Below, one piece after another: positions 15,266 through 59,181 of a DNA stretch of 64,000 nt (position 1 is its first letter; each line of letters opens with the position of its first letter). The notes beneath the pieces are model-generated. The model was not told where the DNA came from. It did not search any database and saw only the letters and a list, made by a program, of their open reading frames with translations. The translations under genes were made by a program, and so were the position numbers. Source of the DNA: Malacoraja senta (Eukaryota); assembly GCA_038087875.1 (NCBI GenBank), contig CM075977.1:310496001-310560000 (forward strand), written 5' to 3'.

Positions 15266-17998
15266 GTCAAGAGTCAAGAGTGTTTATTGTCATATGTCCC
15301 GGACGGGACAATGAAATTCTTACTTCCTGCAGCACAACAGAAAATGTGAATATGTGAACATTGTATATAACAGGAAAAAAAAGAAAATGTTCAATAAATA
15401 ACAAATATAGTGCAAATAACAATATAGTCTTTTGCAGTTCAGAGCTCATAGCTTATTCGTTGTGTTTAATAGCCTGATGGCTGTGGGGAAGTAACTGTTC
15501 CTGACTGTGGACGTTACAGACTTCTGTACCTTCTTCCTGATGGCAGTGGTGAGATAAGTGTGTGGCCAGGATGGTGTGGGTCCTTGATGATTTTGGCTGC
15601 CTTTTTGAGGCAGCGACTACAATAGATCCCTTCGACGGTGGGGAGGTCAGAGCCGGTGATGGACTGGGCAGTGGTCACAACTTTTTGTAGTCTTTTTTGT
15701 GCCTGGACGTTCAAGTTGCCGAACCAGGCCCCGATGCAACCAGTCAGAATGCTCTCTACCGTGCACCTGTAGAAGTTTAGGAGAATCCTCTTCGACATGC
15801 CGAATCTCTGTAATCTTCTCAGGAAGTATAGTCGCTGATGTGCCTTTTTTACAATTGCATCGGTGTGCTGGGTCCAGGAAAGATCTTCTGACATATGCAC
15901 GCCCAGGAATTTGAAGTTATTTACCCTCTCCACCATCGTCCCGTTGATATAAACAGGATTGTGGGTCCTCATGCTTCCCCTACTAAAGTCCACAATCAGT
16001 TCCTTGGTCTTACTGATGTTGAGAGCCAGGTTGTTGTGCTGGCACCATTTGGTCAGTCGGTCAATCTCACTTCTATACTCTGACTCGTTCCTATCTGTGA
16101 TTCGTCCAACCACAGTGGTGTTATTGGCAAACTTGATGATGTAGTTCGCACTATGACCGGCTACGCAGTCATTGGTATAGAGTAAGTAAAGCAGGGGGCT
16201 GAGCACACAGCCTTGAGCTGCTCCTGTACTAATTATTACTGAGGATGAAGTGGTTCCTCCAATTCGATCAGACTGTGGTCTGTGGATGAGGAAGTCAAGA
16301 ATCCAATTGCAGAAGGACGCGCAGAGGCCCAGTTCCGTGAGCTTGGTAACCAGCTTGGAAGGGATGATGGTATTAAACGCCAAGCTATAGTCTATAAACA
16401 ACAGCCTGACGTAGGTGTTTTTATTGTCCAAGTGGTCCAGTGCAGAGTGGAGAGCCAGTGAAATTGCATCTACCGTTGAGCTGTTGTGGCGGTAAGCGAA
16501 CTGTAGTTGGTCGAGGTTCTTTTCGAGGTAGGAGTTGATGTGCACCATTACCAACCTCTCAAAGCACTTCATCACCACAAACGTTAATGCCACTGGTCGA
16601 TAGTCATTGAGGCACGTCATCTTACTCTTCTTGGGCACCGGTATTATTGATGCCCTCTTAAAGCAGGTGGGAACCTCAGACCTCAGAGGGTTCACCCTCC
16701 TGAAGGATCTTCTGACGTCGGCCTCTGTGACTATGACTGTAATACCGTCAGGGCGAATAGGGGCTCGGGAAGGCTCATCAGTGTTCTCCCTATTGAACCG
16801 TGCATAGAACGCATTGAGCTCGTCAGGGAGTGATGTTTCGCTGTCGTTTGAGCTGCCTCCAGATTTCGCCCTGTAGGAGGTGATTGCATTCAAGCCCTGC
16901 CACAGTTGCCCAACATCCGTCTCATTCTCCAGCTTAGAGCAGAAGTCCCTTTTGGCCTTTTTGATGGCCTTACCAAGGTCGTATCTGGACTTCGTATAGA
17001 CCTCTGCATCGCCAAACCTGAATGCCCGGGATCTGGTCTTCAGAAGAATGCAGATCTCATGGTTCATCCAAGGCTTCTGGTTAGGAAACACTCTGAAGGT
17101 TTTTGTTGGAACGCAGTCCATCTGCCTGGGGTGGGATGTAGACCGCAGTCAGGATGATGGAGGTGAATTCCCTCAGTAGGTAGAAGGGACGGCACTTCAC
17201 CGCCAGGTGTTCCAGGTGTGGAGAGCAGGAGTTGGATAGGACTGCCACGTCTGAGCACCACGAAGAGTTGACTATGAGGAAGACGCCCCCTCCTCTCCCT
17301 TTCCCAGATGCCTGTGTACGGTCCATACGGTGGATGGAGAATCCTTCAGGCTGGACCATTGAGTCTGGGAAGCTGGGGGTGAGCCATGTCTCTGTGAAAC
17401 AGAACACAGAGCATTCCCTCAGCTCCCTTTGGTAAAGCAGCCTTGACCTTAAGTCCTCCACTTTGTTTTCTAGTGACTGTATGTTGGCCAGTAGGATGGT
17501 AGGGAGAGGGGTCGAAGTCCCCTGCGCTTCAGTCTTACTTGTAGTCCTACCTGACGACCACGTTTTGTACAACATGAAGCCCTCCTCGGTGTTTAAATGT
17601 ACAGTACTTGCGAGTCTCCGTGAGGTCGGGGATTCCCCTGAGAGCAGGGATTCCCTTACAGTCGGCACCTCCAGCTCCGTTGCTGCTGGGAGATCCTGCC
17701 CGATGGCCTCGATTCCAGACTCCATGAAGGCCTCCCTGGTGTTTACAGGTACCGTACCTACTGTACCTCCACGCCTCCGCGAGGTTGGGGATTCCCCTCC
17801 GATCGGGGATTCCCTTACAGTCGCTATCTTCAGGAGTTCGCAGTAGTGCTAATGCATTTAAATGCGTTAGCAGCTTGTTACTTACATCGTTGATTTCTGC
17901 AGATTCTTTGATACAGGTGAGCTCGGAAAAACTGTATTTGAAGATTTTCTGTTGTGCCGCTGGCAAAATGTCGCCACAGGTAGGCACCATCTTAGGTG
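15266..17998 (-). mobile_element. Rex1/Babar LINE with both ends present and internal deletions
   Basis: APE (LPTILLANIQSLENK, FTETWL, TAVYIPPQA) and RT (NDYRPVALT, QFAYR, GAAQGCVLSPLLY, KFANNTT); TSD CAGGTA (15260-15265, 17999-18004); 5' end AAGATGGTGCC; (CTCTTGA)n tail. Confidence 0.92.
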
Positions 17999-24208: not shown

Positions 24209-24255
24209 TCAAGCACTTTCGGGGACCAGACCCAACGGGTCTGCACTTGGTCTAG
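24209..24255 (+). mobile_element. Helitron 3' end
   Basis: Hairpin CAGACCC-AAC-GGGTCTG (24227-24243) then CACTTGGT-CTAG|T; same end as 30314-30360 on the minus strand. Confidence 0.75.
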
Positions 24256-25438
24256 TTATAATATAAAACTCTGATCTTGGTTGTGGATGTATTTATTTAT
24301 TTGTGTGTGGATTTGTGTGTTTTTCTGTGATTCACATCTCCTCGAAAACCCAACGCGCTAATGGTGAAATTTTTACATATTCTGGTAGAGATTTACTTCA
24401 TGATCTCGAAAATCACCTCATCTGAAAATTTGATTCATTATTTCCCGAGTTTTTTATTAAAGTTGTTAAAAGCTAATGAGCTGATGATGTCACAATGGCT
24501 CTGCTCCTCGCGGCCAGCTGCGCAGAGTTTTCAACGCGCAGCCTGCTGGGTACAGTTTTGCACGAGCTGCGAGTTACATTAACCCCCCCCAGCTCGGAGT
24601 CGACTCTCACTCGGCCGAGGGCTTCAGAGGTCCCGCAAGGTCCCGAGAGGTCCCGCAAGGTCCCGAGAGCAGCCAAGGCCTTTTGCCCGCTCGCAGTTGG
24701 CCACATCCGCGCTGCGTGCTCGCCGACTTCAGGTCTTCCCTCTGCCTCTCTCTCCACCCTCCCCCTCCTCCCTCTTCACCCCCCTCTCCCCCCTCCTTTC
24801 CCACCTCCTCCCCCCACCTCCCCCCTCTCTCTCCCCCCACTCCGCCTCTCCCCCTCCCTCCCCCTCTACCCCCTCCCCCCTCTCTCCCCCTACCCCTCTC
24901 CCCCTCCCACCCCCCTTCCCCACTCTCTCCCCCTAACCCTCTCCCCCTCCCTCCCCCCTTCCCTCCTCTCTCTCCCCCCACTCCCCCCTCTCCCCCTCTC
25001 CCCCTCCCTCCCCCTCCCCCCTCTTTCCCCCATCTCCCCCCTCTCCACCTCCCTCACCCTCCCACCCTCCCCCTCTCTACGCCTCCCCCCTTCCTCCCCT
25101 CTCCTCCCCCTGTCCCTCCTCCATCTCCCTTCTCTATCTTCTCCCCACTCTCCCCACTCTCCCCCTCTCCTCTCCCCCTCTCCTCTGCCCCTCTGCCCCC
25201 TCCATCGCCCCTCTCCACCCCTCCCCCCTCCCCTCTCTCTCCCCCCTCTCCCTCTCTCTGCCCTTTGAGATAGGGCAGGGATGGGGTAAAAGGAGCCAAT
25301 GAATAATATTAATATAATATCAAGGGGGGTGGTTAGTGTGTGTGGGAGGGGGGGGGGTGGTTAGTGTGTGTGTGGGGTGGTTAGTGTGTGTGATGCCACA
25401 GGCCGCCCTCCCCCCCCAACCCCAACCCCTTAGTCTAG
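24256..25438 (+). mobile_element. Non-autonomous Helitron with C/T-rich low-complexity core
   Basis: Starts TATAATATAAAACTCTGATCTT (cf. TATATTACTAAAAGTCTGATCTT at 48980); ends CTTAGT-CTAG|T; hairpin degenerate. Confidence 0.6.
24735..25265. repeat. Polypyrimidine (C/T) low-complexity tract
   Basis: About 530 bp of almost only C and T; source of the Pro-rich and Gly/Glu/Arg-rich pseudo-ORFs. Confidence 0.95.
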
Positions 25439-26539
25439 TCGCTTTTAAAGTCGTTTGCTCAGACTGGTTTTTTAAAAAGATTGAATGATTGATGGTTTAA
25501 GTTGCTAACAAGCTGGTTTTGATGTTATTTCACTGACTGTGAATGAGCAATTCATTAGTACGTCTCGCCGATTGAAAAACATTCTCCCTTGTTTTATTGG
25601 AACGTTTTTGTTTGTCATCTATAAACAGTGAGCTATAAATTGGACACCAGTGTGCAGTGAAGATGGAAGCAAGATGTTTGCAGCCATTCAGATTTTCAAG
25701 GCGTTCTTCCAAGCAATCCTTCTGGCAGAAAGTAAAGCTCTGAATGTAGTGCTGGAGGGGTGATTGTGGCAGGGGAGGGGGTTGGTGAGGGCTTGTTGAG
25801 AACCAGGGACATGTGGTGGGTGAGGCGGTACAGGGAAATCAGGGGTGGTGTGGAGAGAGTGAGAGGCAATGGAGGTAGGGGGAGGGCAATGTAACCACTG
25901 GCTTCCCATGACAAGCTGAAACTTTAACTGCGGACAGAAGATTTCCGTAAAATCAGTGGAGGCTTTCTTCAAGTATATTAATCAGGTTTCAATTATCCTG
26001 TCATGAAGGACCATGTTTAACTATGGGCCTGAGCAGGGTAGTGATGATGGAAGTAAATGAGGGACAAGAAAAGAACGTGCATTCCAAAACGTAACTTGAA
26101 ACTCCTTTCACCTTGCGAAACCCCACAATTCCTGATCGATTCCTTTAATGTAACATTAAGTACTGAGGCCGCTGAATTCTGTTGGTATATTTTCAACAAT
26201 CAGGGAACCACTTTCTGCTGTCTTCGAGTTGTAGAGTCAAACAGCCTGTTGGTCCAACTCATCCAATGCCAACCAATCAGACATAAAAACAGCTTTTTCC
26301 ATGAGTAGTAGCTCTACTAAATAACCAAAAATCTGTAGCCTCCTTTTGCCCTGGTATTTTATTTAATTCACATGTTTAATCAATAATGTTGATTAATGCA
26401 AATTCCTTGTATGTGAATACTTGGCCAATAAACTTATTCATTCATTCATTCATTCAACATGCCACATTTACCTGCAAATGGCCCGCATCCCTCTAAACCT
26501 TTCTTATCCATGTACCTTGTACACGTTGGAATTCAGAAG

Positions 26540-26945
26540 ACTGAGGGGGATCTTATAGAAACTTACAAAATTCTTAAGGGGTTGGACAGGCTAGATGCAG
26601 GAAGATTATTCCCGATGTTGGGGAAGTCCAGAACTAGGGGTCACAGTTTAAGGATGAGAGGGAAGACTTTTAGGACCGAGATGAGGAAATCATTTTTTAC
26701 ACAGAGAGTGGTGAATCTGTGGAATTCTCTGCCACAGAAGGTAGTTGAGGCCAGTTCATTGGCTATATTTAAGAGGGAGTTAGATGTGGCCCTTATGGCT
26801 AAAGGGATCAGGGGGTATGGAGAGAAGGCAGGGATGGGATACTGAGTTGGATGATCAGCCATGATCATATCAAATGGCGGTGCAGGCTCGAAGGGCCTAA
26901 TGGCCTACTCCTGCACCTATTTTCTATGTTTCTATGTTTCTATGT
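26540..26945 (+). mobile_element. Young CR1 3' end
   Basis: Near-identical to 14805-15200; (TTTCTATG)n tail. Confidence 0.9.
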
Positions 26946-28799
26946 TACCTCGCCAAATATTTTTTAAATTTGTTAAAAAATCAAACGGGTCATCTCCAAC
27001 GGGTCTGCACTTGTCTCCCTTAAAAGTAAAATGCTCACACCACTAACAAGGTGAAGCAACATCAGAACCAGTTGTCTGTAGCAGACCATAATTTTCAAAT
27101 GTACGTCAAGTCTACAAACTTTGCCCATGAAGATTCTGGAAATTAGAAGTGTAAACAGAAGATTGTCAACGGCGCTTTATCATCACATGTGTAAACTCAA
27201 ATTCTTTTTTTGTTTTGCATAAAGATCAGTAAAGTATTGCCATACCTAAGCACAATTCCCAATTAACAAAGTGAACAAAAATAGTCCACTGAGACCACAT
27301 GCAAAGGCGATTAAGCATAGGCAGCATCTGTGAACAGAGAAATTAAGTTAACATTCCAGGTCAAAGACATGACTCAGTGGTGGCATTTTGAATATGTTTT
27401 GACCTGTCTTTGGATATTAAGGTAATTTTACAACAAATGATTCTTATTATGCGTTCCAATAAATAAAAATATATATACCTCCCATTTAATTAGATCCATA
27501 TTAACATCAATCTATTTGCTAGTTTGCTTTAAAAGTTCTGAGAATGAAAACCATTTAAAATTCGGCTTAGTTACATTTTAAGTCATATTTAAATTTGTAA
27601 AAGAGACCTAAACAGTATCATACAACAGTTAGAACAGCACAATGTCTTTCCATTATTAATTCATCCGTTATTAATACTTAATAGATTGTTTGATCTATTC
27701 GTGAGTGAAAGATAAAATGGATGCTTGATTCAGATGCAAAATAATTACTACAATAAGTAGCATTGTAGTCGTGGTGGTATTGTAGTAGTAAGTGAAAAAA
27801 AAGCACAAGTTTCCACGTTGTTTGTTCTTTCCATATGAAAAGGCTGTCAGAATTTCATGGGTGGCCTTGCTCAAGGAATCCATTAATCTTGAAGCAAAAG
27901 TTCAGTGAGGTCAATGGGGATCAACATGAGTCCAAAAGTCAAACCCTGCAGCTTGAGTGAAGCACCAGACACATGCACTCTTATTGAAATTCAATGCAGA
28001 AGCTCTAAAATCAATGAGATTAACAGATCTTCCTGAAGGATGATACAATGGGGGTTAAACTTTCATTAGTAAAGCAAAGCTGTTGATGATAACTCAGCAA
28101 TCCGTAGCACACCTCAGCTGATTTACGTTCCAGAGAAAACAAAGAAATAGACATTTGTGCGCAGGGCAAAACTGATTGCTTCTTCTTATCGAGTCCACAT
28201 GACAAGATTAGAAATTGTTCAGCCAGAGCTGAACACACTTCTTGGCATCCGCCTACAATGGCGTCTTGCGCTTCTTGTGCGCAGTGGTGGAAAGATTGGT
28301 GGAAACAGGGCCGCGACGTGTACGCCCTTGACCACAACTGACTGCTGATTTAGACTCATGTTATCCATCTGCAGGAAAATATTGTTATCTCACATCTTTC
28401 GAAACTCAATCTTTTCCTCAGTGTAAATCCTAAATATTTGTTGCTTATGTAATCTTAGTTTATTGCATCACATATATTTTTGTAAGATTTATAATAATAA
28501 CTAGACTAAGTGGGACCCGTTGGGTCCCATGTTCACACGGGAGGGCTGGTCCCCCGACGCAATATTCTACCTCTCCACCAATTCCAATATTGGTGGCCAG
28601 TGGGGGGGGGGGGGGAGGTTTCTGGAGCGCTGGTATGGGTGTTGTTGGCTGCAGGGACTACTGGTCCCCAGAGGGCTAGTATGGACATTGTGGGCCAAAT
28701 GGATTATTGGGGTGGCAGCTCAGTCCCTCAAGCATAATGTGCTGGCAGCTCACTCACGGCTGGTGGGCTGGCAGTTGACTCACGGCTATTCCTTGAAAT

Positions 28800-29195
28800 T
28801 CCATTTCAAGCAGAGTGCAAGGCCACCAAATTCAAATCCATTTTGCTACCATTTCAAGCAGGGTGCAAGGCCACCAAATTCAAGTGCAGTTTCTTACCTC
28901 TTCGAGCAGGGTGCAAGGCCACAAAATTCAAGTGCAGTTTCATACCACTTCAAGCAGGGTGCAAGGCCACTAAATTCAGGTTCAGTTTCCCACCACTTCA
29001 AGCAGGGTGCAAGGCCACCGAATTCAAGTGCAGTTTCCAACCACTTCAAGCAGGGTGCAAGGCCACCAAATTCAAGTGCAGTTTCATACCACTTCAAGCA
29101 GGGTGCAAGGCCACCAAATTCAAGTGCAGTTTCATACCATTTCAAAGAGGGTGCAAGGCCACCAAATTCAAATGCAGTTTCATACCATTTCAATT
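28800..29195. repeat. 48-bp minisatellite, about 8 copies
   Basis: Unit CAAGCAGGGTGCAAGGCCACCAAATTCAAGTGCAGTTTCATACCACTT. Confidence 0.95.
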
Positions 29196-29561
29196 GGGGT
29201 GAAACCACCATAAAAACCACCATAAAACCACACAAAACACCACACTCACAGTTCAGTAGACATTCAGTGTGTTCAGTTGATACACAGCTCAGACAGAGTC
29301 GTGACCTCTCCCTCCCCCATCATGCAGAGACTGAGCCCCACCCACACATCCGGGTTTTATAACCCCATGGCGTGATTGACAGGAGAGAGATTCTCAACAT
29401 TTTTTAAACACTAATAACACTTTTGTTTTTCATTGATGGGAAGAATCCTCTGCACCTGATGAGCGGAGGGGAACTGAGTAAGATGGCCAAATATCACAGC
29501 CGTAAGTTGTAGCGTTTTATCTAAAATCAATATAGTGCAAACAGGGAGTTGTCAAGTTTAG

Positions 29562-29940
29562 ACAAACAACCATTTGCAGGCAGTGCCTTTTCACTTCAAC
29601 CCAAACCCCCCAAACAACCATTTGCAGGCAGTGCCTTTTCACTTCAACCCAAAACCCCCAAACAACTATTTGCAGGCAGTGCCTTTTCACTTCAACCCAA
29701 ACCCCCCAAACAACCATTTGCAGGCAGTGCCTTTTCACTTCAACCCAAACCCCCCAAACAACCATTTGCAGGCAGTGCCTTTTCACTTCAACCCAAACCC
29801 CCCAAACAACCATTTGCAGGCAGTGCCTTTTCACTTCAACCCAAACCCCCCAAACAACCATTTGCAGGCAGTGCCTTTTTACTTCAACCCAAACCCCCCA
29901 AACAACCATTTGCAGGCAGTGCCTTTTTACTTCAAACCAA
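29562..29940. repeat. Triplet-length minisatellite of about 50 bp, about 7-8 copies
   Basis: Unit ACAAACAACCATTTGCAGGCAGTGCCTTTTCACTTCAACCCAAACCCCC-like; in-frame repeat in all ORF translations. Confidence 0.93.
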
Positions 29941-30313
29941 CCATATTTTCATTTTCAAACCACATTAAGGGCACTCACAGTTGAGTAGACATGTGTTCAG
30001 TGTTATTCAGAGCTTAGAGAGACGTGACCCTCTGGCTTCCTCCAGCTTGCAGAGACTGAGTGAGGCACACCACTTCCTGGTTTTATAGTCCCTCCCCCTC
30101 CCTCCAGCAGGGGCAGCAGAGAGAATGGCAATTTTTTAAAAAACATTAATATCTCTCTGATTTTTCATCGATGGAAAAAATCCTCTGGTCCAGGAAAGCG
30201 GAGGGGGGCTCTGAGCAAAGTGGCCAATAATGATGGCCATAGGTGGCGGCATTCTCTCGGAAATCCCAGCACAGTGAGCCAAAAGCGGTCACGATCAGAC
30301 TTTTAGTAATATA

Positions 30314-30770
30314 CTAGACCAAGTGCAGACCCGTTGGGTCTGGTCCCCGAAAGTGCTTCACACCCCGGGGTGTTGTTCCCGAAGGTGCTTCAGACCCCGG
30401 GGTGAAAATCTACGTAAAAAAGATGGCGTCGTTTTCGGAAGAAATCTGAGAAATCGGCAAAAAAAAGATGGCGTCGTTTTCGGAGAAAATCGGAGACAAT
30501 CGGAGAAAATCGCGTGGGGGTGGGGGGGGGTGGATTTTATTTAAAAAAACGTGTACATAAACACGACCGAATTTAATCAGGAGTGGCTAATCGTAAAGAT
30601 AAATGTCATCTCTTTGGAAATGGTAACAAATATGGGCCTTTCCGCACGCTGTGTGGGCCAGGGGCGGTATGAAAGGGGATTTGGTGAAAGTCAGGCAGAC
30701 ACAAGTCAGGCAGACACGTCAGGCAGCCACAAGTCAGGCAGCCACAGAGTTTTATAGATAGATAGATAGA
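30314..30770 (-). mobile_element. Short Helitron joined head-to-tail to the preceding Helitron
   Basis: Minus strand 5' A|TCTATCTATC...TATAAAACTC; 3' CAGACCC-AAC-GGGTCTG-CACTTGGT-CTAG. Confidence 0.75.
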
Positions 30771-34999: not shown

Positions 35000-37315
35000 G
35001 AGTCGAGTCGAGTCAAGTCAAGTCAATTTTATTTCTATACCACATTTAAAAACAACTCTCGTTGACCAAAGTGCTTTACATCAGTGCAGGTACTAACGTG
35101 CTACATACAATGGTACACAGATCTAACAATACATACATAAATACATACAACGCTCCCTCAGAGGACCTCAAGAAACGCTTGTGAGTAGAAATAGGTTTTA
35201 AGTCTAGACTTAAAGGAGTTGATGGAGGGGGCAGTTCTGATGAGAAGAGGGATGCTGTTCCACAGTCTAGGTGCTGCAACCGCAAAAGCGCGGTCGCCCC
35301 TGAGCTTAAACCTGGACCGTGGGATAGTCAGTAGCCCCAAGTCGGCCAACCTGAGAGACCTGGAGGTAGAATGGTGGGTTAGCAGATTTTTGATATAGGT
35401 GGTGGCAAGCCCATTAAGGGCTTTGTATACATATAGGAGGAGCTTCAAATTGATTCTGTACCGCACTGGGAGCCAGTGGAGAGAGGCCAGAATCGGGGTG
35501 ATTTGGTCCCTTTTACGGGTACCTGTCAGAAGTCTCGCTGCGGCGTTTTGGACCAATTGCAGGCAGGACAGGGATGATTGGCTAATGCCAGTGTATAGGG
35601 AGTTGCAGTAATCAAGGCAGGAGGAGATAAATGCGTGGATGATCTTTTCAAGGTCGTCGAATTGGAGGAATGGTTTGATTTTAGCAATCGTGTGAAGCTG
35701 GAAGAAGCTAGCTTTTACCACAGCATTGACTTGTTTGTCAAACTTCAATACGGAGTCAAATATCACGCCAAGGTTTTTGACGTGCGCTTTGAGTAAGGAG
35801 GTTAGGCTTCCAAGGCTGCCTGCTATCGTTTTGATGGAGTCCGAGGGGCCGAGTAGGATGACCTCAGACTTGCTTTCATTTAGTTGGAGGAAGTTCAGCG
35901 CCATCCAACACTTTATATCCTCGAGGCAGTGCATAAGGCTGAGTAGATTTGATCGGTTCTTGGGTTTCAGGGGGAGATAGAGCTGTGTATCGTCTGCATA
36001 GCAGTGGAAGGAAATGCTGTGCCTTTGAATGACTTGGCCTAGGGGGAGCATATACCGATAGAAGAGAATGGGGCCTAGGATGGAGCCTTGTGGAACCCCG
36101 CAGCAAAGGCTAGCTGGGGAAGAGAAAGAGTTGCCTATGTTTGTAGAGAAACTCCTATCTTTGAGGTAGGAAACAAACCAGCTCAGGGCAGTGCCATCAA
36201 TACCAACCCCATACCGGAGACGGTCAATTAGGATGGTATGGTCCACTGAATCAAACACTGCGCTGACGTCGAGAAGGAGCAGGATTGCACAGTCGCCGGA
36301 GTCGATGGCGAGAAGCAGGTCGTTTTGTACCTTCAACAAGGCAGACTCTGTGCTGAGGAGGGCTCTGAAACCTGATCGGAAACTTTCCAGGATGATATTT
36401 TGTTGTAGGTAAGGCATTAGTTGATTTAGAATTACCTTTTCGAGGACTTTTGAAAGGAAAGGCAGTTTGGAAATAAGTCTGTAGTTGCTAGGCAAGGTGG
36501 GGTCTAGGTTAGGTTTTTTCAGGAGGGGCTGGACCACCGCATGCTTGAAACAGGAACAGTGCCAGTGGCCAGAGAACTGTTGATGATAGAGAGGATGCTG
36601 GGACCAGCTATTGCAATGACATCCTGCAGAAGGGCAGTGGGGACAACGTCGAAGGGGCAGGTTGCAGGTTTCACAGTGGAGACCAGCTTTACAAGGGAGG
36701 GTAGAGTAACGGGTTGGAAACAGTCTAATTTAGAAGAACAGACCAATGAGACAGCTAGGTTGCGGATGGGAGGGGAAATATTTGTTCTAATGTTCTCAAC
36801 TTTGCTGGTGAAAAATGTAGTAAATTCTTCGCACTTAGCAGGGGACCCAGCTAAGCTGGTACTGGGGGAAGGACACATGACAGAGGTAATGGTACTAAAT
36901 AGGACCTTGGAATTATGGGCGTTTTTGGAAATAAGGTCAGAAAAGTATTGTGTTCTCGCAGACTTTACTGCTTCCTGGTATTTGAGAAGATTTTTCCTCA
37001 GAATTTCAAAGGAAATTTGAAGCTTATCAGATTTATACTTCCGTTCTGATTTTCTGCACTCTCTTCTTAGGGCTCTGGTGGTGTCATTGAGCCAGGGCCA
37101 ACCTTTAGGCGTAGGCTTTTTCATTTTAAGAGGAGCAACAGAATCCAGGATGGAAGAGCAAGTGGTATTGAATAAATAAATGAGGTCGTCAGTGCTGAGA
37201 TGGAGGGGAGATGCCTTGATGGTGCTGATGTCGGGAGCAGCTATGAGAGCCTCAGAGAACTTAATGGCAATCGAAGAGTTTATGTAGCGGGAGTAGTGAA
37301 CAGGGAGATGGGATT
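35000..37315 (-). mobile_element. L2-clade LINE, 5'-truncated, RT region largely open
   Basis: PLLKKPNLDP..NYRLISKLPFLSKVLEK, GVPQGSILGP, CYADDTQLY, LASLHWLPV; 3' AAGCACTTTGGTCAAC...AATAAAA plus (TTGAC/TCGAC)n tail; frameshift near 36540. Confidence 0.93.
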
Positions 37316-48141: not shown

Positions 48142-49189
48142 AGGAAAGATTGACTGGAATTGAAAATCATTTGAATTTGGAAATTCATTTTTTTAAACTG
48201 GCTTTGCATCATATGACACATGCTGTGAAACTGGCCTCTCTTTTGGCACAGGTTTCATGCCAGAAAGTGGGCTTTTGCGATTCTTCTCAATAATGATCTG
48301 CTTCATTGCCAGACAGGCAGACAGTGATTGGCGCATAATTGGTGGTAACATTACTAATCTGTTGTCATTACTGCCACGTTTCTGAATTCTGAGCTCTGAG
48401 CCTGGCAGTGTAAAGGGGGCCACCCAGGGGAAACAATGCGAGGCCAAAAAGAAACAATCTTCAGTTGCAAGGCAGCTGGAAAGTAAGCTTTCGATTCACA
48501 GTTGGCATCTAATCCCTACTTGGCTTTAGCTGATGTTCTCTTTGTCCATTGCAACACAAATTGTGGACAGGAGCATTGACAATGAGCACTGAATCTTCTC
48601 AAAAGTGTGTGAAGGCTGATTTTAAAATGTTGAGCACATACAGTAATTAAAAACTACAGGTGAATTGATATGAAATCTGTCTCAATATACTGTAACTGTC
48701 AACGTAGCTGATAGGAAGCAACACTGGAAATAAAGATGCTGGGGCACACCTTAGGAAAATTGCTGCTTTGGACATAAATGAGGAATTTCATAGCAATTGT
48801 ATAATATGCTCCTACAGTATTCCTTTCTCCCCCATGTTAACAAATAATCAATCTATTTGAAAGTCATCCATTTATTTAAAATACTTAAGTTAAATTATAA
48901 CTAAAACATTTCACAGCTGATTAAGTACTTTGGAAACGTGGACATTTTTAGAATAGAACAGTTCTTACATAGATACATCTATATTACTAAAAGTCTGATC
49001 TTGACCACTTCCTGTTGTTCTGTATATTGATTTTAGAAAAAACGCTGCCACTTCCGGCTGTGATTTTTGGCCATCTCACTCAGAGTCTCCCCACGCTGTG
49101 CAGGACAAGAGGATTTTTCCCATTGATGAAAAATAAAAGAGTTATTAGTGTTTAAAAAATGTTGAGATTCTCTCTCCTGAAGGCCAGGC

Positions 49190-49256
49190 CCCTTCCGGAG
49201 GGACTATAAAACCTGGAAGTGTTGAGTGCCTCAGTCAGTCTCTGCAAGATGGGGGA
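49190..49256 (+). promoter_or_regulatory. Putative Pol II core promoter inside the Helitron cassette
   Basis: TATAAAA 49205-49211, GGAAGT just downstream, TCAGTC Inr-like about 30 nt downstream, CAAGATGG YY1-like; spacing kept in paralogous cassettes. Confidence 0.45.
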
Positions 49257-49377
49257 AGCGAGAGGGTCATGTCTCTCAGTCTGAGCTGTGAATAACACTG
49301 AACACATGTCTACTAAACTGTGAGTGTGGTTTTACTGACCTTGAGTGCACTTAATGTAGTTTGAAAATGAAAATAGT

Positions 49378-49840
49378 GTTGCTTTGAAATACTGCACTGC
49401 AAATGGTTGTTAGTGGTGGTTGCTTTGAAATACTGCACTGCAAAAGGTCGTTGGTGGTAGTTGCTTTGAAATGCTACACTGCAAAATGTTGTTAGTGGTG
49501 GTTGCTTTGAAATGCTGCACTGCAAATGGTTGTTGGTGGTGGTTGCTTTGAAATGCTGCACTGCAAATGGTTGTTGGTGGTGGTTGATTTGAAATGCTGC
49601 ACTGCAAATGGTTGTTGGTGGTGGTTGCTTTGAAATGCTGCACTGCAAATGGTTGTTGGTGGTGGTTGCTTTGAAATGCTGCACTGCAAATGGTTGTTGG
49701 TGGTGGTTGCTTTGAAAAGCTGCACTGCAAATGGTTGTTGGTGGTGGTTGCTTTGAAATGCTGCACTGCAAATGGTTGTTGGTGGTGGTTGCTTTGAAAT
49801 GCTGCACTGCAAATGGTTGTTGGTGGTGGTTGCCTTGAAA
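49378..49840. repeat. 41-bp minisatellite, about 11 copies
   Basis: Unit GGTGGTTGCTTTGAAATGCTGCACTGCAAATGGTTGTTGGT. Confidence 0.95.
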
Positions 49841-50409
49841 TGGCAAATGATTAAAAGTCTAAACTTGACAACTTCCTGTTTGCACTGCATGTTGATTTTA
49901 GATAAAATGCTACCACTTATGGCTGTGATTTTTGGCCATCTTACTCAGTCCCCCTCCGCTCATCAGTTGCAGAGGATTCTTCCCATCAATGAAAAATAAA
50001 AGTGTATTAGTGTTTAAATTTTTTGAGAATCTCTCCCCTGTCAATCACACAATGAAGGCCATGCCCCTTCCGGTAGGAGGGGGGAGGGAGAGGTCACCCG
50101 GAAGTGTGGGTGTGACTGAGTCTCTGCAAGATGGGGGAGGGAGAGGTCACGACTCTGCAGGGCTCTCACTTAACTTTTTTTCCCTTTTGCCAGCCAGGCA
50201 ACCTAGGCAGCATTTTAGGTTGCCAAATGATAGTTTATGTGGTCATTTAAGAAGGTTTGCATGACGCGTGCGATAATGTGCTTGGACGAAGTACGTAGTT
50301 ACCAGTCGGAATTATGCTCAATAAAGCATTCACATATTATTTCTGCTTCAAATAAAGTCACAAACTAAACATATTCACCAATCAAGACATGATATATACC
50401 ACAATGACG

Positions 50410-52310
50410 GTGGAACAGCAATGGCAGTAATTTCTGGGCATAATCCGGAAGACGCAGGACCATTTCATTCCAAAAAGGAAGAAAGATTCTAAGGGGGAGT
50501 AGGAGGCAATCGTGGCTGACAAGAGAAGTTAGGGATAGAATAAAACTAAAAGAAAAGATGTATAATGCAGCAAAGTGTAGCCGGAAGCCAGAGGATTGGG
50601 AAACTTTCATAGGACAACAGAAGGAAACAAAACCGGCAATACGGGCTGAAAAGATGAAGTATGAAGGGAAGCTGGCCAGGAATATAAAGAAGGACAGTAA
50701 AAGCTTCTTTAGATATGTTAAGGGAAAAAGAGTAGCAAAGTCAAATGTGGGTCCCTTGAAGGCAGACACGGGTGAAATTATTATGGGCAACAAGGAAATG
50801 GCAGAAGAGTTGAATAGGTACTTTGGATCTGTCTTCACTAAGGAAGACACAAACAATTCCCAGATGTACTGGGGGACAGAGGATCTAAGGGGGTAGAGGA
50901 ACTGAAATAAATTTTCATTAGGCGAGAAATAGTATTGGTTGGCTAATGGGACTGAAGGATGATAAATCCCCTGGGCCTGATGGTCTGCATCCCAGGGTCC
51001 TCAGGGAGGTGGTTCTAGAAATAGTGGATGCATTGGTGATCATTTTCCAATGTTCAATAGATTCAGGATCTGTCCCTGTGGATTGGAGGATAGCTAATGT
51101 TATCCCACTTTTCAAGAAAGAAGCGAGAGAGAAAACGGGGAATTACAGACAAGTTAGCCTGACTTCGGTGATGGGAAAGATGCTGGAGTCAATTATTAAA
51201 GAGGTAATAACGGTGCATTTGGATAGCAGTAAAAGGATTAGTCCAAGTCAACATGGATTTTATGAAAGGGAAATCATGCTTGACTAATCTTCTGGAATTT
51301 TTTGAGGATGTGACAAGTAAAATGGATGAAGGGGTGCCAGTGGATGTAGTGTATCTAGACTTTCAGAAAGCCTTTGATAAGGTCCCGCACGGGAGACTGG
51401 TGACTAGTTTGCGGATGACTCAAAGCTGGGTGGCGGTGTGAACTGTGAAGAGGATGTTAGGAGGTTGCAGGGTGACCTGGACAGGTTGAGTGAGTGGGCA
51501 GATGCGTGGCAGATGCAGTATAATATAGATAAATGTGAGGTTATCCACTTTGGTGGCAAAAACAAGGGGGCAGATTATTATCTCAACGGGGTTGGGTTAG
51601 GTAAGGGGAAGGTACAGTGAGACCTGGGTGTCCTTGTACACCGGTCACTGAAAGTTGGCGTGCAGGTATAGCAGACAGTGAAGAAAGGTAATGGAATGTT
51701 GGCCTACATAACAAGAGAATTTCAGTATAGGAGTAGAGAGGTTCTTCTGCAGTTGTATAGGGCTCTGGTGAGACCACATCTGGAGTATTGTGTCCAGTTT
51801 TGGTCTCCTAATTTGAGGAAGGACATCCTTGTGATTGAGGCAGTGCAGCGTAGGTTCACGAGATTGAAAAGACTAGGCTTGTATTCACTGGAGTTTAGAA
51901 AGATGAGGGGGATCTTATAGAAAAATATAAAATTATAAAAGGACTGGACAAGCTAGATGCAGGAAAAATGTTCCCAATGTTGGTCGAGTCCAGAACCAGG
52001 GGCCACAGTCTTAGAATAAAGGGAGGTCATTTAAGACTGAGGTGAGAACAAACTTTTTCACCCAAAGAGTTGTGAATTTATGGAATTCCCTGCCACAGAG
52101 GGCAGTGGAGGCCAGATCATTGGATGGATTTAAGAAAGAGTTAGAAAGAGCTCCAGGGGCTTGTGGAGTCAAGGGATATGGGGAGAAGGCAGGCACGGGT
52201 TATTGATAGGGGATGATCAGCCATGATCACAATGAATGGCGGTGCTGGCTCAAAGGGCCAAATGGCCTCTTCCTGCACCTATTTTCTATGTTTCTATGTT
52301 TCTATGTTTC
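50410..52310 (+). mobile_element. CR1 LINE (RT to 3' end) nested in the hAT element
   Basis: [51 protein letters not shown]; (TTTCTATG)n tail. Confidence 0.92.
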
Positions 52311-53038
52311 TTTGACACTCTCGCTTCCCACATAATTTATCCATAACAAAATATACAGGTTGCATGGAAATTTCTAAAGGCATTTTATGATACTAGCTGT
52401 TCAAACTGACTATACACATGTGACAGGTTAAACATTACACTAACTGACAAGAGATAGCCAAAGGACATAACTGCAGCAAATGTTCTTTTGGTAATATGTT
52501 TAAAGGTGTCAAAACACCACATTACCGGACATTCAGATTAGATGTCCGTGTTGTGAACAGCAATGAAGATACCCAGTTTGTACGCACCAGATTTTAAAAA
52601 AAATTATTGAGAAACGCTGTTTCCATCATTCCCACTTGAGAATTAACGTTAAAATTTCAACTGAAATATCTCCTGACCAAATTTGTGATGTATATGATCG
52701 ACTGTAGAAGTAAAACCTGGATAAATCCAATGTATAGTTGTGAATGTTGCTCATTAAATAACTACAGTACTGAGACTCCATATTAAAGGGCATTGATTTA
52801 CCGTTAAAATGAATTCTGTAATAACGTGTCAACGGTAGCAGTGACAATCGAACACTGCGGTTTTAATGTTTCACGTGTTCACAATTTAATTAATCCATCT
52901 TTATGGACTAAAACAAATAATAACATTGGGAATTAAAACACATTTGGTTGCATTCCATTATCAAACATAGTCAATGTTCGCTCTGAAGACATTTCCAGCA
53001 CAATAGGGTCAGGGAGGGGGGTTGTGTGAATCAGTGCG

Positions 53039-53238
53039 NNNNNNNNNNNNNNNNNNNNNNNNNNNNNNNNNNNNNNNNNNNNNNNNNNNNNNNNNNNNNN
53101 NNNNNNNNNNNNNNNNNNNNNNNNNNNNNNNNNNNNNNNNNNNNNNNNNNNNNNNNNNNNNNNNNNNNNNNNNNNNNNNNNNNNNNNNNNNNNNNNNNNN
53201 NNNNNNNNNNNNNNNNNNNNNNNNNNNNNNNNNNNNNN
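53039..53238. other. Assembly gap (200 N)
   Basis: Run of N of fixed length. Confidence 1.
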
Positions 53239-53821
53239 CTCCCCTCCTCCGCCAGCCAACAGCAAGGTGCGGGGCCGAGCGGTGCAGTTCAAAGAAGGAG
53301 GCCTCCCCCTCCCTCCCTCCTCCTGGCCTCGGCGTGCGAGAGGGTTTGTTTGAAAGAGGTTATCACCGTTAGCGGATTTGCAATCAGCAGCCGCTATCAG
53401 AGCTGGCGTGGTGGGGGAGGAGGAGGTGGAGCCGCTGTCGCGGCTGCTGCTGCTGTTGTGTGGGGCCCGTCATTCACTCCGACCCTTCGTCACCCCGCAC
53501 GTGGAATCTTTGCCCTGCACTACAGCTGTCGCCCACACGAAACGTCACGTTCCTTTTCTCCAGAGATGCTGCCTGACCCGCTGAGTTACTCCTGTTTTTT
53601 GTGTCTATCTTCGGTATAAACCAGTATCTGCAGTGCCAAGCCGGGCAAAATGACTCAGCGTTGAGGTGCCCGGCGGCACTTTGGGTGGTCATTGGCACCC
53701 GGGCAACCGCTCATTTCGAACCCTGCTCTGTCTGAGCTGTGAATCAACTGAACACACTGAATGCCTACTGTAATGTGAGTGTGATGTTTTGTGTGGTTTT
53801 ATGGTGGTTTTATGGTGGTTT

Positions 53822-54215
53822 CACCTTGCTTGAAATGGTATGAAACTGCACGAATTTGGTGGCCTTGCACCCTGCTTGAAGTGGTACAAAACTGCACTTG
53901 AATTTGGTGGCCTTGCACCCTGCTTGAAGTGGTATGAAACTGCACTTGAATTCGGTGGCCTTGCACCCTGCTTGAAGTGGTCGGAAACTGCACTTGAATT
54001 CGGTGGCCTTGCTTGAAGTGGTAGGAAACTGCACTTGAATTTGGTGGCCTTGCACCCTGCTTGAAGTGGTATGAAACTACAATTGAATTTGGTGGCCTTT
54101 CACCATGTTTGAAGTGGTAAGAAACTGCACTTGAATTTGGTGGCCTTGCACCCTGCTTGAAATGGTAGGAAACTGCATTTGAATTTGGTGGCCTTGCATC
54201 CTGCTTGAAATGGAA
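53822..54215. repeat. 48-bp minisatellite, about 8 copies
   Basis: Reverse complement of the 28800-29195 unit. Confidence 0.95.
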
Positions 54216-54502
54216 TTTCAAGGCATAGCCGTGAGTCAACTGCCAGCCCACCAGCCGTGAGCGAGTGAGCTGCCAGCACATCAGGCTTGAGTGACTGAGC
54301 TGCCACCCAAAGAATCCATTTGGCCACAATGTCCGTACTAGCCCTCTGGAAACCAGTCCCTTCAGCCCAGAATACCCATACTAGTGCACCAGAAAGCCCC
54401 CCACTGGCCACCAATATTGGAATTGGTGGAGAGGTGGAATATTGCATTGGGGGACCAGCCCTCCCGTGTGAACATGGGACCAACGGGTCCCACTTAGTCT
54501 AG

Positions 54503-54930
54503 TAGATACATAGATACATAGACAATGGGTGCAGGAGTAGGCCATTTGGCCCCTCGAGCCAGCACCGCCATTCAATGTGATCATGGCCGATCATCCACAA
54601 TCAGTACCCCGTTCCTGCCTTCTCCCCATACCCCTTGATTCCGCTAGCCCTTGGAGCTCTATCTAACTCTCTTTCGAATGCATCCGGTGAATCGGCCTCC
54701 ACTGCCTTCTGAGGCAGAGAATTCCACAATTCACAACTCTCTGTGTGAAAAAGTGGTTCCTCCTCTCAATTCTAAATGGCTTACCCCTTATTCTTAAACT
54801 GTGGCCCTGGTTCTGGACTCCCCCCAACATCGGGAACATGTTTCCTGCATCTAGCGTGTCCAATCCCTTAATAATTTAATAAAATTATTAATATATGTTT
54901 CTATAAGATATCCTCTCATCCTTCTAAATT
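54503..54930 (-). mobile_element. CR1 3' end (host of the Helitron)
   Basis: LDAGNMFPMLG...GHSLRIRG; tail repeat continues on the far side at 48968-48977. Confidence 0.85.
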
Positions 54931-55420
54931 CCAGTTGAGTATTCTAAAATTGAATACAAAGGAAGGAAGTAGATGAATATCAAAATGTTATACAGACAAC
55001 AAATATTCAAGGCATGGCAAGACAATGGAAAGCCTGAGGTGTCAATCTTGGCCGAGTATTGCAGCGTTCTCACCTGCAAGTTAGCAGGATTGATTTCAGG
55101 TCCCAATCTAATAGAAAATACTGTATGCACTGCTAAAACACTCCAATAAGCTTCTGGAAATAAGTTCCTGGAGCTCACTCTTTGAAAATTGGAAGAAATC
55201 AGGGCAGAGTAGAGAGACAGAATTGCCTCCTTCTGTGCTGTGCCTTCAACAATCCTAAGTAGATTGTTCTCTGCAGAGCCACATTTTTTTCTTTCTGAAA
55301 TTATCCTACATAATACATACCATAATAACATTTGAAACATGGCATTATCTTCATTCAATGTGCCAACCCAATGCAACACTCCCTCGCATTACAAATATTT
55401 TAATAGTATTTAATCCTTAA

Positions 55421-55523
55421 AAAAGATAAATGCTTCACAATTTTGCATGCCATCCTTGAGTAAGGGTCAGGCTAATCTTCTCTATATTGTTCCCATTTGG
55501 TGCACGTACTGCAGAAGTGAGGA
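55421..55523 (-). pseudogene. RNU6: U6 snRNA pseudogene
   Basis: Minus strand CTCACTTCTGCAGTACGTGCACCAAATGGGAACAATATAGAGAAGATTAGCCTGACCCTTACTCAAGGATGGCATGCAAAATTGTGAAGCATTT aligns along the full length of U6; ACAGAGA box changed to ATAGAGA; CpG decay. Confidence 0.88.
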
Positions 55524-55972
55524 TTTTTTTTTACAAATGTATATATTATTCATAGTATATACAGTAAATAAAGAGTGCGTCTTTTACTGAGTTGATGATC
55601 TTCCAGCAGCGGCTGATGTTTGTATCTGTACACATTCTGTGAGTAAATATTGATTTTGGACTTGCCACATTGTTTGCAACAACAGTCTTTCCTCAGATAG
55701 ACTTCCTCTTAGACAGGCAGTCTTTTTTATTTTTTTATTTATTTTTTATTTTTTATTTATTGGAAGTACATTACATTACAACCACATACATTAGTACTCG
55801 TCACTTATATCTTCTTACAATTAATGTACTCCGTTTGTTAGGCAGTCTTAATCACATCAAGCAGCAAGTGAATATGACGGATATTTGAGGGGAAAAAATC
55901 CACCTTCTTACACATCCCACAAACCAACATAGAGATTTATGTTTTCAGTCATTTATTCTCGTGTGCACCATT

Positions 55973-58625: not shown

Positions 58626-59181
58626 TCAATAGACAATAGGTGCAGGAGTAGGCCATTCGACCCTTCGAGCCCATCACCGCCATTCAATGTGATCATAGCT
58701 GATCATCTCCAATCAATACCCCGTTCCTGCCTTCTCCCCATATCCCCTGACTCCGTAATCTTTAAGAGCCCTATCTAGCTCTCTCTTGAAAGTATCCAGA
58801 GAACCGGCCTCCACCGCCCTCTGAGGCAGAGAATTCCACAGACTTACAACTCTCTGTGAGAAAAAGTATTTCCTCGTCTCCGTTCTAAATGGCTTACCCC
58901 TTATTCTTAAACTGTGGCCCCTGGTTCTGGACTCTCCCAACATCGGGAACATGTTTCCTGCCTCTAGCGTGTCAAATCCTTAATAATCTTATATGTTTCA
59001 ATAAGATCCCCTCTCTTCCTTCAAAATTCCAGAGTATACAAGCCCAGCCGCTCCATTCTCTCACATATGACAGTCCCGCCATCCCGGGAATTAACCTTGT
59101 AAATCTACGCTGCACTCCCTCAATAGCAAGAATGTCCTTCCTCAAATTAGGGGACCAAAACTGCACACAATACTCCAGGTG
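58626..59181 (-). mobile_element. CR1 3' part
   Basis: [16 protein letters not shown]...GVRGYGEKAGTGY*. Confidence 0.9.

What the first reader, a model, noticed from the sequence alone, without database searches (positions are those of the whole stretch)
28501..30313. Helitron built from repeated 'core promoter + minisatellite array' cassettes
Seen: this element and its sister (48978-54502) each consist of two paralogous modules of about 300-350 bp, each followed by a tandem array. In three of the four modules a TATAAAA box is followed directly by an ETS-like CC(A/T/-)GGA(A/T)GT, a TCAGTC initiator-like motif about 29-32 nt downstream of the TATA, and a CAAGATGG-like YY1 motif (49205 plus; 30081-30087 and about 29355-29361 minus). 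The spacing is kept although the surrounding module sequence has diverged. Established: TATA at about -30 plus Inr is the canonical Pol II core promoter, and Helitrons are known to carry minisatellites and spread regulatory motifs. Inference: a mobile leader-plus-array unit that could transcribe repeat RNAs or seed promoters across the genome. I know of no description of this layout.
Basis: partly seen in the sequence, partly recalled or inferred. Interest (0 to 1): 0.78.

Follow-up and report, generated by a model that had tools for sequence, protein, structure and literature searches.

The report
Helitron with duplicated promoter-like leader
These are two old, decayed copies of a rolling-circle transposon (Helitron) in a skate-like fish genome; each body is a doubled "leader plus minisatellite" unit, and the leader looks like a gene's promoter, short first exon and splice donor, much as in a well-known bat Helitron, but nothing here shows that it is active.

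Summary
Window 28501-30313 (minus strand) and 48978-54502 (plus strand) are two copies of one non-autonomous canonical Helitron: 5' TC, a 3' hairpin followed by CTAG, and insertion between A and T. Each copy reads leader 1, array 1, leader 2, array 2, 3' tail. The four leaders are homologous at 68-89% identity. Three of them carry TATAAAA, then CC.GGA(A/T)GTG, then TCAGTC with its A 28-32 nt after the first T of the TATA, then a GCAAGATGG-like motif.

That gives an exon of about 80-87 nt ending in a start codon, four codons and a splice donor. This is the layout of the bat element HelibatN3, which carries the NUBPL promoter, six codons and a donor.

Leader 2 begins with a copy of the family's 5'-terminal motif, so the "cassettes" are one tandem duplication of the 5' unit. 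They are not independently mobile.

The promoter span is no better conserved than the rest of the leader. One copy has lost its TATA and has a 3.6-kb nested insertion in the putative exon. No expression data could be consulted, and the source gene could not be sought.

Other first readers of this scan noted the same layout elsewhere in this genome. It is a new member of a known kind, of modest interest.

The parts
28501..28528 (-). Element A, 3' terminus: 8-bp stem / 3-nt loop hairpin, then 10 nt ending in CTAG, followed by host T
   Evidence: pattern match; DNA fold -8.6 kcal/mol, z -2.4
28529..28800 (-). Element A, 3' tail (unique sequence with about 30-bp repeats and a G run), about 90% identical to the tail of B
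   Evidence: A 1016-1813 against 53726-54502, 89.7% identity
28801..29193 (-). Element A, array 2: 48-bp minisatellite x 8.2, 91% matches
   Evidence: monomer 46/48 identical to that of B array 2
29194..29562 (-). Element A, leader 2. TATAAAA 29355-29361, CCCGGATGTG 29345-29354, TCAGTC 29329-29334 (A+1 at 29332), GCATGATGG 29317-29325, ATG...GTGAGTG 29243-29263, short 12-bp repeats 29202-29243
29563..29940 (-). Element A, array 1: 48-bp minisatellite x 7.9, 98% matches
   Evidence: monomer homologous to the 41-bp monomer of B array 1 (score 39 against null maximum 19)
29941..30313 (-). Element A, leader 1, with the 5'-terminal motif TATATTACTAAAAGTCTG at 30296-30313. TATAAAA 30081-30087, CCAGGAAGTG 30071-30080, TCAGTC 30054-30059 (A+1 at 30057), GCAAGCTGG 30042-30050, ATG...GTGAGTG 29972-29992, palindromic block 30161-30183
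30314..30758 (-). Separate small Helitron C of the same family (5' TCTATAAAACTCTG, 3' hairpin plus CTAG). Read as nested between nt 4 and 5 (A|T) of the 5' end of element A
   Evidence: Joining the TCTA at 30759-30762 to the sequence at 30313 reproduces the B 5' end TCTATATTACTAAAAG exactly
30759..30762 (-). Probable displaced first four bases (TCTA) of element A. Ambiguous, because the host flank is a (TCTA)n run
   Evidence: sequence; inference
48978..49377 (+). Element B, 5' end (A|TC) and leader 1. TATAAAA 49205-49211, CCTGGAAGTG 49212-49221, TCAGTCAGTC 49231-49240, GCAAGATGG 49244-49252, ATG...GTGAGTG 49306-49326. Upstream ACTTCCTG 49007, ACTTCCGG 49050 and GGCCATCT 49069
49378..49842 (+). 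Element B, array 1: 41-bp minisatellite x 11.3, 95% matches
49843..50157 (+). Element B, leader 2, 5' part. It starts with AAAAGTCTAAACTTGAC, a copy of the 5'-terminal motif. The TATA is replaced by GGAGAGGTCA; CCCGGAAGTG 50097-50106, TGAGTC 50117-50122, GCAAGATGG 50126-50134
50158..53725 (.). 3.57 kb of nested unrelated interspersed repeats (including an N gap at 53039-53238) interrupting the putative exon of leader 2 of B
   Evidence: break in collinearity; pieces match other repeats across the window
53726..53821 (+). Element B, leader 2, 3' part, with ATGCCTACTGTAATGTGAGTG at 53761-53781 and 11-bp repeats
53822..54213 (+). Element B, array 2: 48-bp minisatellite x 8.4, 87% matches
54214..54502 (+). 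Element B, 3' tail, hairpin and CTAG (54499-54502), followed by host T. Removing 48978-54502 restores an uninterrupted (CATAGATA)n run
   Evidence: sequence read directly

Best explanation
Both loci are old, inert copies of one subfamily of non-autonomous canonical (Helitron1-type) rolling-circle transposons. The family is abundant in this skate-like genome. Copies are moved in trans by a Rep/helicase that recognises about 25 nt at the 5' end (TCTA..TAAAAGTCTGATCTTG) and the 3' hairpin plus CTAG.

The internal body arose when the 5' unit was duplicated in tandem once, in an ancestor of both copies. That unit runs from a few bases inside the 5' end, through a leader of about 350 bp, to the minisatellite that follows it.

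The leader most likely derives from the 5' end of an RNA polymerase II gene. It has ETS-like and YY1-like sites, a TATA box, an initiator 28-32 nt downstream, a largely non-coding first exon of about 80-87 nt ending in ATG plus four codons, and a GTGAGT splice donor. The minisatellite sits where the intron would begin. I judge capture from a host gene more likely than inheritance from the autonomous partner.

If it worked, it would work like the NUBPL fragment of bat HelibatN3. A fresh insertion could start transcripts that run into the array, or splice from the donor to downstream host exons. The arrays themselves change by replication slippage, which explains 48-bp versus 41-bp monomers in array 1 and 98% internal identity in array 1 of A.

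- **Shown:** Helitron identity, the doubled architecture, the motif positions and the decay.
- **Inferred:** promoter origin and any activity.
- **My odds:** Helitron with a duplicated leader-array unit, about 0.95. Leader descends from a real Pol II promoter and first exon, about 0.55-0.6. These two particular copies are active today, below 0.1.
For: **Helitron identity**
- The termini match on both copies.
- The 3' hairpin folds at -8.6 and -7.7 kcal/mol, 10 nt from the end.
- B lies between A and T, and removing it restores (CATAGATA)n periodicity.
- Three other Helitron ends in the window share only the first 25 nt or so and the 3' end. The leader is therefore internal, subfamily-specific sequence.

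**Single duplication**
- Leader identities group as ((A1,B1),(A2,B2)).
- Leader 2 keeps TAAAAGTCT.A.CTTGAC.
- Array 1 monomers of A and B are homologous. Array 1 and array 2 monomers are weakly similar.

**Promoter and exon anatomy**
- The distance from the first T of the TATA to A(+1) is 28-32 nt in three leaders.
- All four leaders keep ATG(T/C)CTACT followed five bases later by GTGAGTG.
- A Markov null gives 2.75 TATA-plus-TCAKTY pairs per Mb. None of these in 4 Mb also had GTRAGT at +40 to +160. My calculated expectation is about 0.16 per Mb.

**Precedent**
- HelibatN3 carries the NUBPL promoter, six codons and a splice donor, and acts as an exon trap (PMC4778049).
- Bat Helitrons preferentially carry and amplify gene 5' ends (PMC4224331).
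- Unchecked notes of this scan report ALG13, HTRA2 and SAC3D1 first-exon captures by Helitrons in this same genome.
Against: - No source gene was found or could be sought, because no tool here holds this genome.
- The putative exon has an upstream ATG with an early stop, and the final open reading frame is only four codons, so it cannot be matched to any protein.
- With four copies, the promoter span is at the median of leader conservation. The best-kept block is an unrelated palindrome-like GGATT.TT.CCAT..ATGAAAAA.
- One leader lost its TATA, and the copies differ by 10-30%.
- The leader has few CpGs now.
- The motifs were picked after the fact from an abundant repeat that many readers saw.
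- No transcription, accessibility or reporter data exist here.
Confidence: 0.6

Rival explanations
1. The leader is ordinary internal Helitron sequence with no promoter ancestry. TATAAAA, TCAGTC, GGAAGT, AAGATGG and GTGAGT are short motifs that came together by chance in one ancestral sequence. They are seen several times only because that sequence was duplicated and transposed.
For: - All occurrences trace back to one ancestral leader.
- There is no excess conservation of the motif span.
- One copy lost its TATA without any other visible consequence.
- Loose TATA-plus-initiator pairs occur three more times in this window alone.
- At about 0.16 per Mb, the triple motif is expected hundreds of times in a genome of this size.
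Against: - The strict combination is rare per kilobase.
- It comes with further features typical of gene 5' ends: flanking ETS-like and YY1-like sites on both strands, and a start codon just before a conserved donor.
- It occurs in a transposon class known to capture gene 5' ends (PMC4224331).
Confidence: 0.3
2. The leader is the element's own promoter and 5' untranslated region. It was inherited from the autonomous Rep/helicase-encoding partner when the coding part was deleted, and was not captured from a host gene.
For: - The leader starts immediately after the 5'-terminal motif and points inward, where a transposase promoter would sit.
- A Xenopus autonomous Helitron has a presumed promoter at its 5' end (PMC12001565).
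- A note of this scan reports an intact Rep/helicase reading frame elsewhere in this genome (unchecked).
Against: - Other Helitrons of the same family in this window share only about 25 nt at the 5' end and then differ completely.
- A splice donor about 85 nt after the start is not needed for the reportedly intron-less Rep/helicase frame (unchecked).
- I could not inspect the autonomous copy.
Confidence: 0.12
3. One reading: the leader-plus-array unit is a functional, selected transcription unit that makes repeat RNAs (for example small-RNA precursors), or is kept because it seeds promoters for the host.
For: - The unit was duplicated as a whole, and both halves kept the motifs in three of four cases.
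- Arrays persist next to the leaders in both copies, with similar copy numbers.
Against: - There is no conservation excess.
- The copies are decayed, nested into and interrupted.
- Neither the arrays nor the exon fold better than shuffled sequence.
- There is no covariation and no Rfam match.
- Array 1 changed its monomer length between copies.
Confidence: 0.06
4. The TATA box belongs to a polymerase III type-3 promoter (as in U6 genes) driving a small RNA of about 100 nt that ends at the T runs just after GTGAGTG.
For: T runs (TTTT) lie about 95-105 nt after the predicted start in three leaders. A U6-like sequence lies 0.9 kb from element B.
Against: - There is no Rfam match, even at E up to 5.
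- There is no stable or covarying structure.
- No proximal-sequence-element-like block is evident at about -55, a region that is the least conserved and full of insertions and deletions.
- The nearby U6 copy shares no similarity with the element.
Confidence: 0.02

Closest known systems
HelibatN3 and other promoter-carrying Helibat subfamilies of vespertilionid bats (PMC4778049, PMC4224331)
   Same: A non-autonomous canonical Helitron whose internal sequence is a promoter, a very short coding start and a splice donor, followed by intron-like sequence. It has the potential to act as a portable promoter or exon trap.
   Different: In the bats, the source gene (NUBPL) is identified and activity was shown experimentally and in transcriptomes. 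Here the source is unknown and activity is untested. Here the unit is also duplicated inside the element, and each copy is followed by a minisatellite. The host is a cartilaginous fish.
Minisatellite-carrying Helitron-type elements: DINE-1/HINE of Drosophila, Cg_HINE/Pearl of oysters, Heli2Xen / Helitron-N2_XT of Xenopus, Helitron-N1_DR of zebrafish (PMC4067079, PMC7492417, PMC12001565)
   Same: Modular build of element-specific flanks with central tandem repeats. Some oyster elements carry two consecutive arrays. Arrays diverge between related subfamilies while the flanks persist.
   Different: Most of those are Helentron/Helitron2-type elements with subterminal inverted repeats and T|T insertion. 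This one has canonical Helitron1 ends. Here the two arrays are separated by a repeated promoter-like leader rather than lying side by side, and the monomers are short (41-48 bp against about 140-180 bp).
Tandem and composite Helitrons produced by rolling-circle replication or end bypass (discussed in PMC12001565 and PMC4778049)
   Same: Head-to-tail repetition of Helitron sequence that begins close to the 5' end.
   Different: No 3' terminus (tail, hairpin, CTAG) lies between the two units. It is therefore not a simple read-through dimer of complete elements. The junction runs directly from array 1 into the 5' motif.

Membership tests
Canonical Helitron (Helitron1), non-autonomous | 5' end begins with TC (TCTA...) | tested here: met
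   B begins A|TCTATATTACT at 48978. A has TATATTACT at 30313; its TCTA is probably displaced to 30759-30762 by a nested Helitron.
Canonical Helitron (Helitron1), non-autonomous | 3' end CTRR preceded by a short GC-rich hairpin about 10-12 nt upstream | tested here: met
   CTAG at 28501-28504 (-) and 54499-54502 (+). The 7-8-bp stem hairpin ends 10 nt from the terminus.
Canonical Helitron (Helitron1), non-autonomous | Insertion between host A and T without target-site duplication and without terminal inverted repeats | tested here: met
   B...GATACA|TC...CTAG|TAGATA. Excising it restores the (CATAGATA)n register with no duplicated bases. A: CTAG|TTATT on the 3' side.
Canonical Helitron (Helitron1), non-autonomous | No Rep/helicase gene inside (non-autonomous); an autonomous partner exists in the genome | tested here: inconclusive
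   The only reading frames within A and B are translations of repeats. There is no Rep/helicase frame in the window. A partner is reported only in unchecked notes of this scan.
Helentron / Helitron2 (DINE-1, HINE) | Short subterminal inverted repeats at both ends and insertion between T and T | tested here: not met
   The ends are TC...CTAG with an A|T site. No inverted repeat between the termini was seen.
Promoter-capturing Helitron (HelibatN3 type) | Internal fragment homologous to the promoter, first exon and intron start of an identified host gene | not testable with these tools
   No collection available here holds this genome or its relatives. A protein search and DNA pattern scans were blank.
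Promoter-capturing Helitron (HelibatN3 type) | Core-promoter anatomy in sense orientation followed by a short exon and a splice donor | tested here: met
   TATAAAA, an initiator at 28-32 nt, an exon of about 80-87 nt, ATG plus four codons, and GTGAGT. The donor is present in 4 of 4 leaders and the TATA in 3 of 4.
Promoter-capturing Helitron (HelibatN3 type) | Transcripts that start in the element or are spliced from its donor | not testable with these tools
   No expression data are available.
Pol III type-3 small-RNA gene | Match to a known small-RNA family, or a conserved structure downstream of the TATA | tested here: not met
   Rfam at the gathering threshold and at E up to 5 gave nothing relevant. 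No covariation was found. Fold z-score +0.84.

The most novel reading that the evidence does not exclude
The leader is a live, portable Pol II promoter that the Helitron subfamily duplicated together with its minisatellite. Young copies would transcribe their arrays or splice into host exons, giving cartilaginous fishes a genome-wide source of new transcription start sites and repeat RNAs. Transcription through the array might itself promote array turnover or element mobilisation.
Probability: 0.07. Interest if true: 0.6.

Novelty: new member of a known kind. Interest (0 to 1): 0.27.

Why it matters
If the leader is a real promoter with a first exon, this family would be a second vertebrate example, after vespertilionid bats, of Helitrons spreading ready-made promoter and splice-donor units. 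It would be found in a lineage for which my literature searches turned up no description of Helitron biology. It would also link promoter capture to minisatellite birth within one element. As it stands, the two copies are decayed transposon relics. Their main value is as annotation and as a lead for a genome-wide family study.

Tried and rejected
1. **Further copies through protein searches.** I searched the 280-residue reading frame that spans the tail, array 2 and part of leader 2. 5915 word candidates were collected and none was significant.
2. **Further copies through DNA pattern scans.** I scanned for a conserved leader block outside the tested motifs in the metagenome, prokaryote-genome and viral collections, and for the 3' terminus in metagenomes. 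All were blank, as expected for collections without fish DNA.
3. **Look-up of the leader by sequence in this scan's notes.** Blank.
4. **Small-RNA gene reading.** Rejected: there is no Rfam match, no covariation and no fold better than shuffles for the exon or the arrays.
5. **Protein-coding cargo.** Rejected: only repeat-derived reading frames are present, and the ATG after the initiator stops after 11-16 codons.
6. **Simple read-through dimer of complete Helitrons.** Rejected, because no 3' terminus lies between the units.
7. **Terminal inverted repeats or a target duplication for the 3.57-kb insertion in B.** None convincing; it is a mosaic of other repeats.
8. **Link between the nearby U6-like sequence and the element.** There is no sequence similarity.
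Full report
**What is there.** The window is repeat-rich eukaryotic DNA. Its interspersed repeats, and earlier notes of this scan, point to a skate- or ray-like cartilaginous fish. I did not identify the species myself. Region 28501-30313 (element A, minus strand) and region 48978-54502 (element B, plus strand) are collinear in BLAST. The one exception is 3.57 kb at 50158-53725 that is present only in B.

**Helitron identity.** Both elements have canonical Helitron ends.
- B starts A|TCTATATTACTAAAAG at 48978 and ends with a hairpin followed by ACTTAGTCTAG|T at 54502.
- The hairpins fold as 7-8-bp stems ending 10 nt before the terminus, at -8.6 and -7.7 kcal/mol.
- B sits inside a (CATAGATA)n run. 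Removing 48978-54502 restores the 8-bp register exactly, with no duplicated bases. This acts as an internal empty-site control.
- The 5' end of A reads CTAG|TATATTACT, because a second small Helitron, C (30314-30758, minus strand), abuts it.
- The four bases just beyond C are TCTA. Joining them to 30313 reproduces the 5' end of B exactly. C therefore most probably inserted between A and T at position 4/5 of A.
- The host flank there is itself a (TCTA)n run, so this last point is not certain.
- More ends of the same family lie at 24209-24255 and 24256-25438, with a fragment near 26990.

**Architecture.** In element orientation each copy reads as follows:
1. leader 1, about 375-400 bp;
2. array 1 (A: 48 bp x 7.9; B: 41 bp x 11.3);
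3. leader 2, about 350-400 bp;
4. a few 11-12-bp repeats;
5. array 2 (48 bp x 8.2 in A, x 8.4 in B);
6. a tail of about 300 bp, then the hairpin and CTAG.

The four leaders align throughout. Pairwise identities:

| Pair | Identity |
|---|---|
| A2-B2 | 89% |
| A1-B1 | 79% |
| B1-A2 | 77% |
| B1-B2 | 74% |
| A1-B2 | 69% |
| A1-A2 | 68% |

This gives ((A1,B1),(A2,B2)), so the doubling predates the split of the two copies.

Leader 2 begins with TAAAAGTCT.A.CTTGAC. That is the motif forming nt 11-27 of the Helitron 5' end. It is also the only part of the 5' region shared with the other Helitron subfamilies in the window.

No tail, hairpin or CTAG lies between array 1 and leader 2. The body is therefore one internal tandem duplication of the 5' unit, starting a few bases inside the 5' end. 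It is not two complete elements, and it is not an independently mobile cassette.

Array 1 monomers of A and B are clearly homologous despite their different lengths (score 39 against a null maximum of 19). Array 1 and array 2 monomers are only weakly similar, about 2-3 sd above shuffles.

Between A and B, the first unit has diverged about twice as much as the second unit and the tail (21% against 10-11%). This suggests the two copies come from different sub-lineages, or from a recombinant master copy.

**The promoter-like motifs.**

| Leader | TATAAAA | Motif directly after it | First T of TATA to the A of TCAGTC | YY1-like motif |
|---|---|---|---|---|
| B1 (+) | 49205-49211 | CCTGGAAGTG | 28 or 32 nt | GCAAGATGG |
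| A1 (-) | 30081-30087 | CCAGGAAGTG | 30 nt | GCAAGCTGG |
| A2 (-) | 29355-29361 | CCCGGATGTG | 29 nt | GCATGATGG |

Leader B2 has CCCGGAAGTG, the form from which the others differ by CpG-type changes. At the TATA position, however, it reads GGAGAGGTCA.

From the predicted +1 this gives an exon of about 80-87 nt. The exon ends with a start codon, four codons (M-S-T-K/Q/E in three leaders, M-P-T-V in B2) and a splice donor whose intron side is a perfect GTGAGT.

An upstream ATG inside the YY1-like motif is followed by a stop after 11-16 codons.

Upstream of the TATA there are further ETS-like sites and an inverted AAGATGGCC. The ETS-like sites are ACTTCCTG, ACTTCCGG (in B1) and CTTCCGG.

**Is it more than chance?** Of the 19 TATAAAA sites in the window, only the three leader sites have TCAKTY 26-33 nt downstream. 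In 4 Mb of first-order Markov sequence modelled on the window, such pairs occur at 2.75 per Mb on both strands together. None of them also had GTRAGT at +40 to +160. My calculated expectation for the triple is about 0.16 per Mb.

For about 0.4 kb of leader this is unlikely by chance. Three cautions apply:
- It is a single ancestral event.
- The motifs were chosen after the fact.
- A genome of this size should hold hundreds of chance instances.

**Is it conserved beyond its surroundings?** No, as far as four copies can tell. The 48-column span from TATA to the YY1-like motif has mean pairwise identity 0.73, and 176 of 333 equally long leader windows do as well or better.

The best-kept block is a palindrome-like GGATT.TT.CCAT..ATGAAAAA about 80-100 nt upstream of the TATA. 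The stretch just upstream of the TATA is the most variable and is full of insertions and deletions.

**What it is not.**
- Rfam finds nothing in the element at the gathering threshold or at E up to 5.
- The putative exon shows no covariation.
- Neither the exon nor the arrays fold better than shuffled sequence.
- The only reading frames are translations of repeats, and a search of the large protein collection with the longest one was blank.

**Best reading.** This is a non-autonomous Helitron whose 5' unit was doubled. Its leader probably descends from a Pol II promoter with a first exon and splice donor.

The close precedent is bat HelibatN3. It carries the NUBPL promoter, six codons and a splice donor, and it behaves as an exon trap (PMC4778049). 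Bat Helitrons preferentially carry gene 5' ends and amplify them to high copy number (PMC4224331).

Minisatellite-laden Helitron-type elements, including some with two arrays, are also well described (PMC12001565, PMC7492417, PMC4067079).

Unchecked notes of this scan report first-exon captures (ALG13, HTRA2, SAC3D1) by Helitrons in this same genome. Several first readers also saw this same promoter-exon-donor leader elsewhere in the genome, once duplicated within one element. These notes raised my prior, but they are not independent evidence.

My odds:
- About 0.55-0.6 that the leader has true promoter ancestry. Host capture is more likely than inheritance from the autonomous partner.
- About 0.3 that the motifs are fortuitous.

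The two copies in this window are decayed: they differ by 10-30%, one TATA is lost, the exon of B2 is split by 3.57 kb of other repeats, and A is nested into by another Helitron.

**Limits.** No tool here holds this genome, so three things were out of reach: the copy census, the search for a source gene, and comparison with the autonomous partner. No expression data were available either. My literature searches found no paper describing Helitron families of skates, rays or sharks in any detail.

Noticed in passing
window 55419-55524 (-): Full-length match to U6 spliceosomal RNA (65 bits), 0.9 kb beyond the 3' end of element B. It carries many CpG-to-TpG-type changes relative to what I recall of vertebrate U6, so it is probably a decayed copy or pseudogene. 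It shares no similarity with the Helitron.
   Followed up: partly
window 30314-30758 (-): Small Helitron C of the same family, nested in the 5' end of element A. Its cargo includes two 45-bp repeats containing AAAAAAGATGGCGTCGTTTTCGGA (a textbook YY1-type AAGATGGCG core) and a 15-bp array at 30688-30746.
   Followed up: partly
window 24209-25438 (+): A Helitron 3' end (hairpin plus CTAG at 24255) comes straight after an assembly gap. It abuts a further Helitron-like element that ends in TTAGTCTAG at 25438. That element carries a 500-bp C/T-rich low-complexity array (24737-25263) and a 20-bp repeat. This is a second head-to-tail Helitron junction in the same window.
   Followed up: partly
window 30161-30183 (-), 29426-29448 (-), 49111-49133 (+), 49974-49996 (+): The best-conserved block of all four leaders is palindrome-like, GGATT.TT.CCAT(C/T)(G/A)ATGAAAAA, centred on ATCGAT/ATCAAT. 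It could be a dimeric factor site or a hairpin in the single-stranded transposition intermediate. It is unexplained.
   Followed up: no
window 48960-48977 and 54503-54560: Element B inserted into the (CATAGATA)n tail of a very common interspersed repeat (core ...ATGGGTGCAGGAGTAGGCCATT...). Other copies of that repeat are at about 26516-26946, 51887-52304 and 58629-59181.
   Followed up: partly
window 29563-29940: Array 1 of element A is 98% homogeneous internally, while the surrounding leader differs about 21% from its counterpart in B. The array has therefore probably been expanded or homogenised in place after insertion.
   Followed up: no
window 15514-17725 (-) and 35158-37124 (-): Long reading frames that look like reverse-transcriptase and endonuclease parts of LINE-type retrotransposons. 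I did not run a family search on them.
   Followed up: no
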